Program-made: the position numbers and the translations under genes
In this document: positions 35,079 through 40,891 of the stretch, piece by piece
Numbering within the stretch: position 1 is the stretch's first letter
Layout of the letters: each line of letters starts with the position of its first letter
The notes under the pieces: generated by a model
What the model was told of the DNA's origin: nothing
Seen by the model: only the letters and a program-made list of their open reading frames with translations
Database searches by the model: none
Assembly: GCA_002811645.1 (NCBI GenBank)
Contig: PDIP01000026.1
Coordinates: 62,001-126,000, forward strand
Source: Corallochytrium limacisporum Hawaii
Taxonomy: Eukaryota > Protista > Pluriformea
Direction of reading: 5' to 3'
DNA length: 64,000 bases

Positions 35079-37320
35079 TGTCTAAAGAAAAGGTTGTGTT
35101 TCTTGTTTCTAAGTTCCCTTAAACCCCGGTTGGAAAGATTATCTTACAGTTTTGAAATGCTGTACAAAGAATAATGATCGTTTGATTTGGTTCTAGAGTC
35201 TGGTGGGCGGCATTGTCGCTAGCCTAAAAGTTGAAATTCCAGACTTTCTCCTTGTCACCGAACTGATGAACACATTAGTCCACATTAAGTTTATAATGTT
35301 TACTGATCAGATTACCACCTTATACCTTTAGTATGAGATGTGATAAAGCATCATTCCATGTTCTGCATGAAGTCCACAAGTGGCAGTATTAACTAAAACA
35401 CGCCACCAACATTTCAAAATGTTCCAAAGCCATCACCGGCCGGGAGTTCGAAACTGGCAGAAATCATTTCCTCCCGTCCCTGGAGTTATTCCGTACTGGC
35501 AGCCATAACACACACATACAGCCCAACGCGCACACACACAATGGCTTCACCGGATTGCACAACACTGGGCCCCCCCCCTCCTCCCCCCCCATTCCCCTTG
35601 ATTTCCAAATCGGCAGATGGAGTAAAGCCAATATCTCGAAACCTCCCNNNNNNNNNNNNNNNNNNNNNNNNNNNNNNNNNNNNNNNNNNNNNNNNNNNNN
35701 NNNNNNNNNNNNNNNNNNNNNNNNNNNNNNNNNNNNNNNNNNNNNNNNNNNNNNNNNNNNNNNNNNNNNNNNNNNNNNNNNNNNNNNNNNNNNNNNNNNN
35801 NNNNNNNNNNNNNNNNNNNNNNNNNNNNNNNNNNNNNNNNNNNNNNNNNNNNNNNNNNNNNNNNNNNNNNNNNNNNNNNNNNNNNNNNNNNNNNNNNNNN
35901 NNNNNNNNNNNNNNNNNNNNNNNNNNNNNNNNNNNNNNNNNNNNNNNNNNNNNNNNNNNNNNNNNNNNNNNNNNNNNNNNNNNNNNNNNNNNNNNNNNNN
36001 NNNNNNNNNNNNNNNNNNNNNNNNNNNNNNNNNNNNNNNNNNNNNNNNNNNNNNNNNNNNNNNNNNNNNNNNNNNNNNNNNNNNNNNNNNNNNNNNNNNN
36101 NNNNNNNNNNNNNNNNNNNNNNNNNNNNNNNNNNNNNNNNNNNNNNNNNNNNNNNNNNNNNNNNNNNNNNNNNNNNNNNNNNNNNNNNNNNNNNNNNNNN
36201 NNNNNNNNNNNNNNNNNNNNNNNNNNNNNNNNNNNNNNNNNNNNNNNNNNNNNNNNNNNNNNNNNNNNNNNNNNNNNNNNNNNNNNNNNNNNNNNNNNNN
36301 NNNNNNNNNNNNNNNNNNNNNNNNNNNNNNNNNNNNNNNNNNNNNNNNNNNNNNNNNNNNNNNNNNNNNNNNNNNNNNNNNNNNNNNNNNNNNNNNNNNN
36401 NNNNNNNNNNNNNNNNNNNNNNNNNNNNNNNNNNNNNNNNNNNNNNNNNNNNNNNNNNNNNNNNNNNNNNNNNNNNNNNGGAGGAGGCCAAAGGAGCGGG
36501 GAGCAGGCGAAGAAGACCGGGGCAGGTGTTTTCAAGAGAGAGAGAGAGAGAGAGAAGGGGGCCGCGAATCGAGGCTCAGGCAAAAAAAGTGGGGGGGAGT
36601 AAGGAGAGTCGGGAGCTTTGGGGGGGAGGGGGGAGGGGGTGCGGGAGCCTGACTGACTGTTCGTGAACCAACGGGGTGACAAATTCGATTCGGCACACGG
36701 TGCGTCCTTTTGGCGCCGTCAGCCAGTACTATGGGTATCGTGCACAAGATTCGCTGTCGTGGTGTCTTTTACGGTATTGAAGTTACTGGCACCACGGGGC
36801 GAGAAGCGAACTGGCGTGCCGGCGAACTGTAGAAATGCGCGGGTTCACTGGGGGGTTCGGGATCTGAATATGCAGTACTTTCACTATAGTCGACCATGCG
36901 TTGTCTTACCTATACGTCGCCTTCCGTTTCTTTGTTGTTTTTGTTGTTGTGTTCTCCTCGGGAGGGGGGGCTTTGGGCATACGTACCATAGTGAATGTAC
37001 CGCGATTCAGGTGCGATACGGCCTGAGTGGCCTGGGCATACCGATTTTGTTTTGACTCAATGTTCGTCGCCCCATGGCCTCCCTTGGGAGCTCTTTAGTA
37101 GTGAATAAACTGAGTTTAGTCCCAAGAAAGTTATATCCCCCAGTCCAACCTTGTCGCCTTTATTTTCTATAGTCAGAGATGAATATTTACAGTATCCGTA
37201 TGTAATATGAGTATATCAAAAAGCTTCCGTGAGATGATCGTCCTCTGAGAGCTACGATTGCCAATCTGGCTTGACAAGTTACACAGTGAGAATCACGGAG
37301 CGCCAACGGCGGGGCCCGAA

Positions 37321-37392
37321 TCACTGTGGTGTTCATGGCGCATGACTCATGATCGCGAGTGTGTCAATCGCGGCGGAGATACCAGCTTCTGC
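37321..37392 (-). pseudogene. Degenerate HisKA H-box remnant at the phytochrome 3' end
   Basis: In-frame reading AEAGISAAIDTLAIMSHAP*TPQ* aligns without gaps to the hybrid-kinase consensus [23 protein letters not shown]. Confidence 0.7.
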
Positions 37393-38991
37393 CTCGACGT
37401 TGTCACCCAGAAGATGCTGCGCTTTCTCATTCAGAAGAAAGTCTGTCAGACGCAGGCGAAGAAACTCAGCCTCCCGGAGCTGAATGTCGCTCCAAGGAGT
37501 GCTGGTATTGTGCACATTCTCGTGCCATGGAGCGAAAGACTTGCGAGGATGTAGGGACCAGCTGCCATCCTCATCGATTTGGATGCGCGTTTCGGGGTTA
37601 CCCGCCCAGGAAATGGTCCGCATGACTTCCCCCCGGAAGAAGAGCAGATAGTTCCTATCACCCGGTAGGATAACAGCCAACACACCACTGGCATGCTCAG
37701 TATACTTCACAGCCTCCGGGAAATGCGCAGACAGATGGTCCGTGGAGTATAGACCCCCCAGGTGCTGACCAAACCGTGTGTTTTCATCGGTGTTCATAAT
37801 CCATCGAAGCAGGTCCTCACAGAACTCGGTTGGAGGCACCCTTCCACGAACATGAACCTTACCGTCAATGCTCACGAGAGTGCCGGTGGCCTCAAACACA
37901 TCCATCAGGTCAGCAGTGAACTGTAGCAACTGATCTATGCTGTTCACCTGCGCCCTCTGCCCGTTCAGTGTCCGGTTTAGTTTCTCGTGCTGGCAGTTCA
38001 GGTGCTGGTGAATTGCCTGATAGTCAATCTTCAGTAGCTGCAGACTGCATGCTTGGGCAATGACTTCAAAATGAGATATGGCCTTCTTGCTCAGAGGGCG
38101 CGGAGAGTAATGGTAACAGAGAACTAGACCCCACAGCTTAGTGCCCTGGACAAGTGAGCAGGACATGGTTGCAGAGACGCCCATATTCTTCAGGTATTCA
38201 ATGTGCATCGGAGATACAGAACGGAGTGCTCCGTGGGTCATGTCCATGGGCTCCAGAGCAATGCAATCCTCGCTGACGCGGTATAGCCTACTGTCACCGC
38301 CGTTGACGTTACCGAGCACTCTCACTAGATTCTGGACATACAAGGCGCGAGCCTGGCGCGGAATGTCCGAGGCAGGGAAGTGCAGGCCAAGGTACCGATT
38401 CAAGGGCATCTCAGCAGCCTCGGCGACAACACAGCCGTTACCACTGCTGTCAAACTTGTAAATCATGACCCGGTCATATCCACTTATCCTTTTAATGCCC
38501 ATGACCAGGCTGTCGTAGCATTGACTGGCCTGCGTAGAGTTGAAGATGTCAGAGAGGACGTTGGAGAAGTTCTCAATGAGCAGATCCTCCATGTCGTGAT
38601 CGCATGCTTGGAATTCGATTCCGATCAGTCCATTGCCAGCACGGTAGAGATCGATATCTACAGGTTGAAGCTCATTGTCCTTAAAGGGCAACTTAACGGG
38701 TAGGTTCTTATAAACTTTATAGCGGCCGCTCTTCTGAAATTCCTGCAGGGCATCGCCCAAGCTGTGGCCCATTAGGTTCAGCATGCACTTTCCGCGGTAG
38801 TCCTCCAATTTACCTCCGAGGTGTTCTGTCACATTTTCGGAGACGATTTGGACAGTAAAAGTCGTTGGATGTACTACCACCAATGTGCCATGGGGCTGTA
38901 TACTACGAGGAGTATGCAGAGGAGCCAAATGGTGCTTCTCTACCAGTTCGCTGATGTCAATCCTCTGACCATTCTGCGCTCGCACCACCAT
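37333..38991 (-). CDS. Phytochrome photosensory core (PAS2-GAF-PHY) without an output kinase
   Basis: PLHTPRSIQPHG (PAS2); GYDRVMIYKF, HFPASDIP.QARALY and LRSVSPMHIEYLKNMGV (GAF); WAGNP and PRKSF tongue motifs (PHY). ORF ends at LAIMSHAP*. Confidence 0.95.
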   Translation of the reverse strand: MVVRAQNGQRIDISELVEKHHLAPLHTPRSIQPHGTLVVVHPTTFTVQIVSENVTEHLGGKLEDYRGKCMLNLMGHSLGDALQEFQKSGRYKVYKNLPVKLPFKDNELQPVDIDLYRAGNGLIGIEFQACDHDMEDLLIENFSNVLSDIFNSTQASQCYDSLVMGIKRISGYDRVMIYKFDSSGNGCVVAEAAEMPLNRYLGLHFPASDIPRQARALYVQNLVRVLGNVNGGDSRLYRVSEDCIALEPMDMTHGALRSVSPMHIEYLKNMGVSATMSCSLVQGTKLWGLVLCYHYSPRPLSKKAISHFEVIAQACSLQLLKIDYQAIHQHLNCQHEKLNRTLNGQRAQVNSIDQLLQFTADLMDVFEATGTLVSIDGKVHVRGRVPPTEFCEDLLRWIMNTDENTRFGQHLGGLYSTDHLSAHFPEAVKYTEHASGVLAVILPGDRNYLLFFRGEVMRTISWAGNPETRIQIDEDGSWSLHPRKSFAPWHENVHNTSTPWSDIQLREAEFLRLRLTDFLLNEKAQHLLGDNVEAEAGISAAIDTLAIMSHAP

Positions 38992-40891
38992 CTCGCAATG
39001 CTTGTATGGGTGCTATCCTTTTTGTCTGTAATCCAATAGTAGAGCCAGCGTTCAATTTTCACGTTTCTATGGATGGCTGGCTCACGTTCTTAGGGAAGCT
39101 AATCATGGGATATCTACCGTCCTGCTCTGAAGGTCCTGGGAGATGTTCATGCACCGCAACCTAAGTACCACCCCTGGATGTAGTAGATCTGAAAAGAGAT
39201 GCTGTAGACATACCATCGAGAGACCCGTTCTGTCAACATAAAGAAAAGCCACAAGAAGAAACAAAAGGCGCTCAGGACCCTGGGGAGTTGGGCCTCATTC
39301 TTGAGTATCCCGAATAAGACTGAGGATAGCCAATACATGTTCCCTTTGCATGCCACCCACCCTTCCCCCCATGGACCCACCCAACCCGGGCCGGGAGGGT
39401 CGGGGGGTGGCTGTCCCTCGCCCCTTTCCTCGGTAACTGACTCTTTCCGTCCCCCGTCGTTGCGAACGTATAAAATTTGGACAACCGAAATTGCGGAAAC
39501 TCCGAGCACGCCCGCTCTCCCCCGGGGGGGGCCGGGAAAGCCCAAGTTTGCTACCCGCCCGACCAGGCTGAGACGCAAGGTTGGGAGAAGCGGGAAAGCA
39601 CGGAGAGGAAGGTGGGGGGGTGGGGGGACATTGAAGAGGAATCCCGTCTNNNNNNNNNNNNNNNNNNNNNNNNNNNNNNNNNNNNNNNNNNNNNGGGGGG
39701 GACATTGAAGAGGAATCCCGTCTCGCCTCGCTTGTGCCCGTCCGGACGGGTAGCCAAAACCGAGAATTTTATGCTTCTGCCGGGGTATGAAAGGGGAGAT
39801 TGTGGGTGTCAAATTCCTTTTTTTTTTCCTCGTCTTTTTCCTTTATTTTAAAAGAAACCAATCTGGAAACCCACGTAACTTCCACATTCCACCCCAGACT
39901 CTTTGTTTCATTGTAACCATTCATCGGTGCAAGGGAAAGGAGGGGAGGACGTAGTTCGGACTAAAGCGATCCTTAAGATGAATTCCGCATAATCTTGGCA
40001 CAGAAAATGAAACGAAGTGGCTGGCTGGACGTAGCAGGCGCGCACTGAACGGTTATTCTACTGCCACCAACGTCTCACACGAGGAGACACGCATGGTGGT
40101 GCATACTCCGTAGAAAGGAAAGTGACGAGCAAGCATGTTGAACAGCCATAAACGGATGCATTCTGTGAAAGCGATAGCTCTCTGGCTTAAACAGATGCGA
40201 GTGCTCTGAGTTACCAACTTCCTATTCATGATGCAAAGGGCCTCTTCCACCTTAGGGGCACAGGATTTCAATGCAAGATCTCCATTGCTAGAGAACCATG
40301 AACAGGAAAATTTGAACCGCAGTCTTCTGGTTCCCGATAAGTATGGATGGTGGGAATACAGCAACAAAGAGGTGGCCGTTTGTCGGACATGAACGTTAAC
40401 ATCACTTTGTAGGTACTTCGTGTCGAACAGACATCCTACGCACAGGTTTGGCTGCGACATACGCATGCGTGCACGGATACCATACTGTTCACGACACCAC
40501 TCCACTCCCCTCAGACATCAAGAGAATTTTATTGCGGAGGAGGACAGTTGTAATTTAGCTATACCCTAATAACATCATTATTTTATTTTAAATCGAGAGT
40601 CCATTTTTCGCTTAACTATAGCCCAGGGACTGGTTTATTTTTTTTGCGTGTGGTCCCTGAACGCACCTTTGCTTTGGCGCGCGGCTCCGTGTAGGGCGAT
40701 GGGACTGGTCACGAGTTCTCAGCAAAGCTAAGCCGGGGTCACTAATTTGCGCGCAAGTTTGCAGGTCCTAAACTCGGTGATATCTGCACAAACATGGATG
40801 AAGTTTCAATCAGTGTTACAAACCGCGCGATGACATTAGTCTATGAGTAGTATGTAATCAGCCTGTCTGATTGGAACAGAGGTGCTCAATC

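What the first reader, a model, noticed from the sequence alone, without database searches (positions are those of the whole stretch)
37333..38991. Phytochrome in a holozoan-like genome lacking both chromophore-attachment cysteines
Seen: the N-terminal bacterial/fungal site (C-x3-PIH) reads KHHLAPLH, and an in-frame TAG eight codons upstream of the ATG rules out a simple extension. The plant/cyanobacterial GAF site (CH) reads SPMH. Pocket residues equivalent to DrBphP Y176, D207-I-P, Y216, R222, R254, H260, Y263 and the PRxSF tongue are kept, but H290 appears to be Tyr (LVLCYH versus LIACHH). Known: phytochromes are established in plants, algae, fungi and bacteria but not animals; a Cys-less RpBphP4 variant acts as a redox sensor. 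Inference: a non-covalent tetrapyrrole (bilin, haem or chlorophyll catabolite) sensor, or a light-independent sensor. Flanking genes are eukaryotic, but N-gaps lie on both sides.
Basis: partly seen in the sequence, partly recalled or inferred. Interest (0 to 1): 0.8.

Follow-up and report, generated by a model that had tools for sequence, protein, structure and literature searches.

The report
Cysteine-less, kinase-less phytochrome in Corallochytrium
A single-celled marine relative of animals carries and transcribes a second red-light-sensor (phytochrome) gene whose pigment pocket is intact but which has lost both the cysteine that normally anchors the pigment and its entire signalling half, making it a candidate for a natural phytochrome that holds its pigment without a chemical bond.

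Summary
Window 37333-38991 (minus) is an intact, intronless 552-codon PAS-GAF-PHY phytochrome. The canonical N-terminal Cys is His20, and the Cys-x-x-EPIHIPG motif carries 4 changes in 7 conserved columns. The His290 equivalent is Tyr293, which 0 of 362 homologues have. The pocket and tongue residues are kept. The missing GAF Cys is normal for this class and is not an anomaly.

New here:
- The ORF stops two codons after a fossil phospho-acceptor His. No kinase remnant follows, so the protein is sensor-only.
- Contigs of two 2015 runs that look like transcriptomes cover only 37136-39100. They end 23 nt past an AATAAA and contain the upstream in-frame TAG, so no upstream exon can supply a Cys. 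His20, Tyr293 and the stop are shared by two strains.
- Its best match among 1.84 billion proteins is a Cys-bearing 942-aa paralogue in the same genome, EukProt Clim_evm60s108 (Corallochytrium limacisporum). The scan had already reported that paralogue on other DNA. The two are sisters in ML trees, and the short copy has the shorter branch.
- The genome has haem oxygenase and no ferredoxin-dependent bilin reductase.

Best reading (0.45): an expressed sensor-only phytochrome that binds biliverdin non-covalently. Rivals are a chromophore-free regulator and a recently disabled relic. Contamination is unlikely.

The parts
37333..38991 (-). Complete intronless CDS: 552 codons plus a TGA stop at 37333-37335
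   Evidence: ORF list. Contigs of two runs are collinear with it and show no joints. Codon positions checked.
38992..39100 (-). 5' UTR of at least 109 nt, containing the in-frame TAG at 39013-39015
   Evidence: X2 contig 38593-39100 is identical to the window. TAG checked.
38905..38934 (-). Degenerate chromophore-attachment motif, residues 20-29: His20 in place of Cys, then E23A, I25L and G29R. The other strain has Gly29.
   Evidence: Conserved-column table, gap-free BLASTP to the paralogue, strain differences.
38614..38928 (-). PAS_2 domain (residues 22-126)
   Evidence: Pfam PF08446, E = 4.4e-14.
38035..38517 (-). GAF domain (residues 159-319) with a conserved bilin pocket: Y178, D209-I-P, Y218, R224, R257, H263, Y266, S277, S279
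   Evidence: Pfam PF01590; column compositions.
38203..38208 (-). Met262-His263, the position of the plant/cyanobacterial GAF Cys. Met is normal for the bacteriophytochrome type.
38113..38115 (-). Tyr293 (TAC) at the DrBphP His290 / SaBphP1 289 position
   Evidence: The codon is unchanged in the second strain.
37426..37956 (-). PHY domain (residues 346-522) with the tongue: W462-x-G464, P482-R-K-S-F486, W489-x-E
   Evidence: Pfam PF00360, 9.7e-42. The AF2 model shows a beta-hairpin tongue.
37345..37488 (-). 48-residue C-terminal helix (residues 502-549): the PHY exit helix continuing into the remnant of DHp helix 1
   Evidence: DSSP on the AF2 model gives H502-549.
37336..37359 (-). Fossil H-box L-A-I-M-S-H-A-P. 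His550 sits in the phospho-acceptor column, and the ORF stops two codons later.
   Evidence: Alignment of the tail with bacterial kinases: that column is H in 63 of 87 rows.
37136..37332 (-). 3' UTR of 197 nt with AATAAA at 37159-37164. The transcript contig ends 23 nt after the hexamer.
   Evidence: X1 contig 37136-38708; hexamer position.

Best explanation
This is the second phytochrome gene of Corallochytrium limacisporum. It is an old duplicate of the Cys-bearing, kinase-like paralogue, and it is now a transcribed, sensor-only protein: PAS-GAF-PHY plus a 48-residue exit helix.

Shown:
- The fold-defining domains, the bilin-pocket residues and the tongue are conserved as well as in the full-length paralogue.
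- The attachment Cys is His.
- The His that hydrogen-bonds ring D is Tyr.
- The kinase module is deleted just after the fossil phospho-acceptor His.

Inferred:
- The protein still takes up biliverdin IXa, made by the cell's haem oxygenase, into the GAF pocket without a thioether bond.
- It responds to red/far-red light with altered, probably red-shifted, photochemistry.
- It signals through contacts of its dimer helices and exit helix with another protein rather than by phosphotransfer. The most obvious candidate partner is the full-length paralogue.
For: Architecture and fold:
- Pfam PAS_2/GAF/PHY.
- AF2 model with pLDDT 90.5 and pTM 0.88.
- Foldseek TM 0.75-0.80 to Pr-state photosensory modules.

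Selective decay:
- Of 92 columns that are at least 90% conserved in 119 bacterial homologues, the short protein keeps 80 and the full-length paralogue 82.
- 4 of the short protein's 12 misses fall in the 7 columns of the Cys motif. That is 4/7 against 8/85, Fisher p = 0.005.
- So the pocket and tongue stayed under constraint after the attachment site was released.

Rate: its terminal branch is shorter than the paralogue's, 0.82 against 1.07 under LG+G4 and 1.52 against 1.85 under C20.

Expression and gene model:
- Contigs of two runs from two studies cover only 37136-39100.
- They stop 23 nt after an AATAAA, show no introns and include the in-frame upstream TAG.
- His20, Tyr293 and the stop are the same in both strains.

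Chromophore supply: haem oxygenase is present (PF01126, 5.6e-45) and no ferredoxin-dependent bilin reductase was found.

Literature:
- Recombinant phytochromes mutated at the binding Cys still embed the chromophore and show modified photochemistry.
- A Cys-less PhyB signals in planta (PMC8707292).

Bacterial precedent: the only bacterial homologue lacking both Cys (P0234) sits next to a response regulator and a haem-oxygenase-like ORF.
Against: - No binding or photochemistry was measured.
- Tyr at the His290 position is unprecedented among 362 homologues. Changes at that site impair photoactivity or stability in studied bacteriophytochromes (PMC6126659).
- Between the two strains there are 6 non-synonymous and 3 synonymous differences, giving dN/dS of about 0.59. 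This rejects omega = 0.1 (p = 0.011) but not omega = 1. One of the differences hits the 91%-conserved Gly29.
- The well-kept half H-box suggests the truncation may be recent, so present-day function after truncation is not proven.
- According to a 2021 review, no natural phytochrome has been shown to carry its bilin non-covalently.
- The heterodimer test gave no verdict.
Confidence: 0.45

Rival explanations
1. The protein has a light-independent role. It no longer holds a bilin and works as a chromophore-free regulatory or scaffold subunit, for instance a partner or dominant-negative of the full-length paralogue. Alternatively it senses something else, such as redox state or another tetrapyrrole. 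This would be analogous to the Cys-less 'achromo' RpBphP4 of Rhodopseudomonas palustris.
For: - The Cys is lost and three more residues of the attachment motif are changed.
- His290 is replaced by Tyr.
- The output domain is gone, leaving a long exposed helix suited to coiled-coil contacts.
- Precedent: Vuillet et al. [quoted passage not shown] I saw this only as a reference in PMC6879726; its content is from my own knowledge.
Against: - All residues that contact the bilin and the tongue motifs are retained as well as in the Cys-bearing paralogue: D209-I-P, Y178, Y218, R224, R257, H263, Y266, S277/S279 and PRxSF. This is hard to explain if no bilin is bound.
- The redox-sensing RpBphP4 keeps its kinase; this protein has none.
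Confidence: 0.25
2. The gene is a recently disabled relic. It was a working phytochrome histidine kinase for most of its history, then lost its kinase by a rearrangement after the H-box His and lost its Cys. It is still transcribed but is drifting towards a pseudogene.
For: - Homology ends abruptly two codons after His550, with no kinase remnant in 35079-37400.
- The half H-box is still recognisable, which fits a late truncation.
- Between-strain dN/dS is about 0.59 and not distinguishable from 1.
- There is a G29R polymorphism at a conserved Gly.
Against: - 552 codons remain without a stop or frameshift in two strains.
- Conserved columns outside the Cys motif are kept (77 of 85) even though the motif itself has accumulated about 0.85 changes per site.
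- Its branch is shorter than that of the paralogue.
- It has a defined poly(A) site and is expressed.
- Five of the six non-synonymous strain differences fall on variable columns.
Confidence: 0.25
3. The 3.2-kb island between the two N-gaps is a bacterial contaminant or a misassembly.
For: - N-gaps lie on both sides.
- All non-self homologues checked are bacterial.
Against: - The best hit in the exhaustive search is the paralogue of the same genome, and the two are sisters in the tree.
- GC3 is 0.61 and the RSCU correlation with neighbouring genes is 0.63, like the paralogue's 0.69.
- It has a eukaryote-style AATAAA and transcript end, and is present in two runs from separate studies and strains.
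- The 39650-39694 gap is flanked by the same 28 nt on both sides, which points to an uncollapsed overlap.
- All six gaps of the window sit beside G/C- or purine/pyrimidine-rich low-complexity tracts.
Confidence: 0.03

Closest known systems
Corallochytrium limacisporum long phytochrome (EukProt Clim_evm60s108; G000:C110, 942 aa)
   Same: Same genome. It is the best hit of the exhaustive search (308.7 bits, 35% identity) and the sister in ML trees. It has the same PAS-GAF-PHY module with the same pocket and tongue residues. The two share rare changes at conserved columns: Arg to Ile/Leu at 305/323 and Trp to Phe at 451/464.
   Different: The long copy keeps the Cys (Q-C-D-L-E-P-I-H) and the His290 equivalent, and carries an HATPase_c domain (Pfam) followed by a further C-terminal region that earlier notes call a pseudo-receiver. 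It has Ser where the phospho-acceptor His should be. The short copy keeps that His but has no Cys, no His290 and no kinase.
Bacteriophytochromes (BphP), e.g. Agrobacterium Agp2 (6g1y), Stigmatella SaBphP1 (6bao/6bap), Deinococcus DrBphP
   Same: 30-38% identity over the whole photosensory module. The GAF site is Met-His as in BphPs. Biliverdin is the only bilin the genome can make. The predicted fold is Pr-like. SaBphP1 also naturally lacks the His290-equivalent (PMC6126659).
   Different: 356 of 362 homologues have the N-terminal Cys and nearly all carry an output module. None has Tyr at the His290 position. This gene is eukaryotic, monocistronic and polyadenylated.
Cys-less 'achromo' RpBphP4 of Rhodopseudomonas palustris (Vuillet et al. 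2007, EMBO J; content from my own knowledge, reference seen)
   Same: It is a natural phytochrome homologue that has lost the bilin-binding Cys.
   Different: RpBphP4 retains an active histidine kinase that is redox-regulated. This protein has no kinase and keeps a fully conserved pocket.
Engineered Cys-less phytochromes (recombinant Cys mutants; Arabidopsis PhyB without the binding Cys, Oka et al. 2011, as reviewed in PMC8707292)
   Same: The chromophore is embedded without a covalent bond, photochemistry is modified, and signalling is retained but weaker. This is the proposed mode of action here.
   Different: Those are laboratory mutants. The review states that no phytochrome from its genuine host has been found with a non-covalent chromophore.
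Stand-alone PAS-GAF-PHY proteins of bacteria (e.g. metagenomic P0210, 531 aa)
   Same: A photosensory module without a fused output domain, encoded as a complete ORF.
   Different: Those proteins keep the Cys and His290 and end right after the PHY helix. This protein ends inside a fossil H-box, so it derives from a kinase by truncation.

Membership tests
Phytochrome superfamily (knotted PAS-GAF-PHY photosensory module) | PAS_2, GAF and PHY domains in this order | tested here: met
   Pfam PF08446, PF01590 and PF00360 are all above the gathering score. Foldseek TM is 0.75-0.80 to solved modules.
Phytochrome superfamily (knotted PAS-GAF-PHY photosensory module) | Conserved bilin-pocket residues (DIP motif, Tyr176/216/263, Arg222/254 and His260 equivalents) and tongue motifs (W-x-G, PRxSF, W-x-E) | tested here: met
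   All are present.
Phytochrome superfamily (knotted PAS-GAF-PHY photosensory module) | A Cys for thioether linkage of the bilin, either N-terminal or in GAF | tested here: not met
   His20 and Met262. Only 1 of 362 homologues shares this state.
Phytochrome superfamily (knotted PAS-GAF-PHY photosensory module) | Binds a bilin and photoconverts between two states | not testable with these tools
   Needs recombinant protein and spectroscopy.
Bacteriophytochrome histidine kinases (BphP-HK) | N-terminal Cys three residues before E-P-I-H | tested here: not met
   The site reads H-H-L-A-P-L-H.
Bacteriophytochrome histidine kinases (BphP-HK) | HisKA/DHp plus HATPase_c output | tested here: not met
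   The ORF stops 2 codons after the H-box His. tblastn finds no kinase remnant downstream. The transcript ends at 37136.
Bacteriophytochrome histidine kinases (BphP-HK) | Biliverdin supply from haem oxygenase | tested here: met
   PF01126 at G000:C272, 5.6e-45, confirmed on the translated ORF. No PF05996 bilin reductase was found.
Achromo RpBphP4-type redox-sensing phytochromes | Cys-less sensor coupled to a redox-regulated histidine kinase | tested here: not met
   It is Cys-less, but no kinase is present.
Fungal phytochromes (Fph) | Specific phylogenetic affinity, N-terminal extension and HK-receiver output | tested here: inconclusive
   No N-terminal extension and no HK-receiver output. No fungal sequence appeared among the best 120-150 hits of three searches. 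No fungal sequences could be fetched for a tree.

The most novel reading that the evidence does not exclude
This is a natural phytochrome that works with a non-covalently held biliverdin. A 2021 review says no such phytochrome has been found in a genuine host. It occurs in a close unicellular relative of animals and acts as a kinase-less light-gated subunit that pairs with its Cys-bearing paralogue. The two copies are complementary relics: the short one keeps the phospho-acceptor His and has no ATP-binding domain, and the long one keeps the ATP-binding domain and has lost the His.
Probability: 0.25. Interest if true: 0.8.

Novelty: new variant of a known kind. Interest (0 to 1): 0.6.

Why it matters
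Phytochromes are described from plants, algae, fungi, slime moulds, heterokonts and bacteria. I found no paper that links them to Corallochytrium, and none reporting one in Holozoa: the three papers that hold both words do not connect them.

Within that already unusual setting, this copy is a natural experiment. The covalent anchor, the ring-D His and the whole output module are gone, while the pocket and tongue stay conserved.

If it binds biliverdin, three things follow:
- It would show that covalent attachment is dispensable in nature, not only in mutants.
- It would offer a small, eukaryote-adapted, biliverdin-using scaffold with probably red-shifted absorption for near-infrared probes.
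- It would give a testable model for how sensor-only phytochromes signal through partners.

If it does not bind biliverdin, it documents how a photoreceptor is dismantled step by step.

Tried and rejected
- **Heterodimer test.** Complex prediction with short 130-552 and long 150-650 scored 0.06 and gave no verdict. It is not evidence either way.
- **Cluster names.** That query could not be made. I judged origin from gene neighbourhoods instead.
- **Large tree.** A 113-row tree under the mixture model did not finish in two calls. I replaced it with a 60-row LG+G4 careful tree, whose bootstrap had not fully settled, and with 30-row C20 trees.
- **Leave-one-out trees.** Each Corallochytrium copy alone finds no supported bacterial home. 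Long-branch attraction is therefore not formally excluded, but nothing contradicts the sister relation.
- **P0266.** This was the top hit of the paralogue search, at 360 bits. It is a purple-bacterial protein with two tandem sensor modules, not a closer relative.
- **P0188.** It looked like a bacterial precedent for a split sensor plus kinase. It is a frameshifted kinase, with its H-box lying in the 'intergenic' stretch.
- **Kinase remnants downstream of the stop.** None were found in any frame.
- **Papers.** I found none on phytochromes in Corallochytrium or Holozoa. Hehenberger 2017 and Vuillet 2007 are not held.
- **Fungal and algal phytochromes.** They could not be fetched, so the requested Fph/algal phylogeny was not done.
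- **Between-strain dN/dS.** It has too few changes (9) to decide.
Full report
**What is there.**
- Window 37333-38991 (minus strand) is an uninterrupted 552-codon ORF. Pfam assigns PAS_2 (22-126), GAF (159-319) and PHY (346-522), all above the curated cut-offs.
- The closest solved proteins are bacteriophytochrome photosensory modules: Agp2 6g1y at 2.6e-74, then FiDCB and SaBphP1.
- An AlphaFold2 model built on 89 aligned sequences is confident (pLDDT 90.5, pTM 0.88). It shows a beta-hairpin tongue and a single 48-residue C-terminal helix at 502-549.
- Foldseek places the model on Pr-state modules of Agp1, PsBphP, SaBphP2 and DrBphP, with TM 0.75-0.80.

A gap-free BLASTP alignment with the paralogue puts His20 opposite the canonical Cys: K-H-H-L-A-P-L-H against Q-C-D-L-E-P-I-H. 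Among 362 homologues gathered in three searches:
- 356 have that Cys, 7 have the GAF Cys, and only one (bacterial P0234) has neither.
- Met262-His263 in GAF is the normal bacteriophytochrome state.
- The His290 equivalent is Tyr293, and no homologue has Tyr there. It aligns with residue 289 of SaBphP1. The literature says the His at this site hydrogen-bonds ring D in Pr and a propionate in Pfr, and that variants at it impair photoactivity or stability (PMC6126659).
- His20 (CAC) is two base changes from a Cys codon. Tyr293 (TAC) is one change from His.

**Gene model and expression.**
- Two public runs of 2015 from two studies hold the stretch.
- Their contig sets are 13-14 Mb in total against a 24.1-Mb genome. 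Laid on 36490-39650, they cover only 37136-39100 and nothing in either flank.
- One contig ends at 37136, which is 23 nt after an AATAAA at 37159-37164.
- Another runs from inside the CDS to 39100. It is identical to the genome and passes through the in-frame TAG at 39013-39015.
- No joints were reported.
- I take this as RNA, although the tool marks 'RNA' as a guess. On that basis the transcript is monoexonic and polyadenylated, at least 1.97 kb long, and no upstream exon can extend the reading frame.
- Run X2 is identical to the window. Run X1 is another strain, with 9 coding differences (3 synonymous, 6 non-synonymous), 2 substitutions and a 2-bp deletion in the 3' UTR.
- His20, Tyr293 and the stop codon are the same in both strains.
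- The window's Arg29 is Gly, the canonical residue, in X1.
- dN/dS is about 0.59. This rejects omega = 0.1 (p = 0.011) but not omega = 1, so the test has little power.

**Truncated output.**
- The tail...I-D-T-L-A-I-M-S-H-A-P-stop, aligns with the DHp helix-1 / H-box of bacterial kinases (E-L-D-S-F-A-Y-x-x-S-H-D-L). His550 lies in the phospho-acceptor column, which is His in 63 of 87 rows.
- Homology ends there. All three downstream frames are full of stops, and tblastn with seven kinase C-termini finds nothing in 35079-37400.
- The protein is therefore sensor-only, derived from a kinase by a break just after the acceptor His. This agrees with the separate first-stage note s1-569731.

**Origin.**
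- The genome is 24.1 Mb in 286 contigs and holds two PHY-domain genes.
- The second (G000:C110, 942 aa) is EukProt Clim_evm60s108, i.e. Corallochytrium limacisporum. It keeps the Cys and an HATPase_c domain but has Ser at the acceptor-His column. The scan had already reported that gene on other DNA (s1-578680, s1-564546).
- In an exhaustive HMMER search of 1.84 billion representatives, that paralogue is the best non-self hit (308.7 bits, 35%). The next hit has 38% identity.
- The top hits I could inspect lie in prokaryote-style gene neighbourhoods.
- ML trees join the two Corallochytrium proteins: UFBoot 100 / SH-aLRT 99 under LG+G4 with 60 rows, and SH-aLRT 98 under LG+C20+F+G4 with 30 rows.
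- treekit warns that two long branches meet. Each copy alone finds no supported bacterial home, so nothing contradicts sisterhood.
- Shared rare replacements at conserved columns support sisterhood: Arg305/323 to Ile/Leu and Trp451/464 to Phe.
- Codon usage is native. GC3 is 0.61, and RSCU correlates at 0.63 with window genes against 0.69 for the paralogue.
- The upstream gap is flanked by the same 28 nt on both sides, and all six gaps of the window sit beside G/C- or purine/pyrimidine-rich low-complexity tracts.
- Contamination is therefore very unlikely.

**Constraint.**
- Of 92 columns at least 90% conserved in 119 bacterial homologues, the short copy keeps 80 and the long copy 82.
- Four of the short copy's twelve misses (C20H, E23A, I25L, G29R) fall in the seven columns of the attachment motif. 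That is 4/7 against 8/85, Fisher p = 0.005, or about 0.85 against 0.10 changes per site.
- Had the whole gene drifted as long as the motif has, roughly half of the other conserved columns should have changed.
- The short copy's terminal branch is also shorter than the paralogue's.
- So the pocket and tongue stayed under purifying selection after the covalent site was released. This is the main argument for continued ligand binding.

**Chromophore supply.** The genome has a haem oxygenase (PF01126, 5.6e-45, confirmed on the ORF) and a weaker second match. It has no ferredoxin-dependent bilin reductase. Biliverdin IXa is thus the only bilin the cell can make itself.

**Mechanism proposed.**
- Biliverdin enters the conserved pocket but is not thioether-linked.
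- Light-driven ring-D isomerisation, tuned by Tyr293, refolds the tongue and moves the exit helix.
- The output is a change in contacts with a partner, not phosphotransfer.
- The first step rests on the literature. Cys-mutated recombinant phytochromes embed the chromophore with modified photochemistry, and a Cys-less PhyB still signals weakly in planta. The same review notes that no native phytochrome with a non-covalent chromophore is known (PMC8707292).
- Binding, photoconversion and the partner are inferences. The heterodimer prediction gave no verdict.

**Rivals.** They are a chromophore-free or redox-type regulator (0.25), a recently disabled but still transcribed relic (0.25) and a contaminant (0.03).

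**Limits.**
- Only assembled contigs of the runs were available, not raw reads.
- Fungal and algal phytochromes could not be fetched, so the deeper origin is open.

Noticed in passing
G000:C110 (L002:409-3237) against window 37336-37359: The two paralogues are complementary relics. The short copy keeps the phospho-acceptor His (M-S-H) and has no ATP-binding domain. The long copy keeps HATPase_c and reads S-V-S-S-D-S at the same columns.
   Followed up: partly
window 38905-38907: Strain polymorphism at a 91%-conserved Gly of the knot motif. The window (and run X2) has Arg29; run X1 has the canonical Gly29.
   Followed up: partly
window 39650-39694 and the other five N-gaps: The same 28 nt (GGGGGGACATTGAAGAGGAATCCCGTCT) lies on both sides of this gap, so it looks like an uncollapsed contig overlap. 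All six gaps of the window sit beside G/C- or purine/pyrimidine-rich low-complexity tracts.
   Followed up: partly
L012:4001-7381 (metagenome contig, protein P0234): This is the only bacterial homologue of 362 that lacks both Cys; it has Phe at the N-terminal site. It is a full histidine kinase followed by a response regulator and a short haem-oxygenase-like ORF. That hints that Cys-less bacteriophytochromes may still use biliverdin.
   Followed up: no
L008:3001-5350 (metagenome contigs, protein P0188): An apparent sensor-only phytochrome followed by a separate HATPase ORF is really a frameshifted kinase. The H-box G-H-E-L-R-T-P-L-A-S is encoded in the 'intergenic' 32 bp in another frame. The same arrangement recurs on at least 6 contigs.
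   Followed up: partly
window 38176-38208: A 33-nt stretch encoding the conserved I-E-Y-L-K-N-M-G-V-S-A region also matches, with 3 mismatches, longer contigs of both runs (3.0 and 5.5 kb). These are probably the long paralogue's transcript.
   Followed up: no
G000:C175:245601-245954 (L004): A second, weaker haem-oxygenase match (E = 1.9e-12, C-terminal half of the family only) lies inside a 479-aa open frame. I did not examine it.
   Followed up: no
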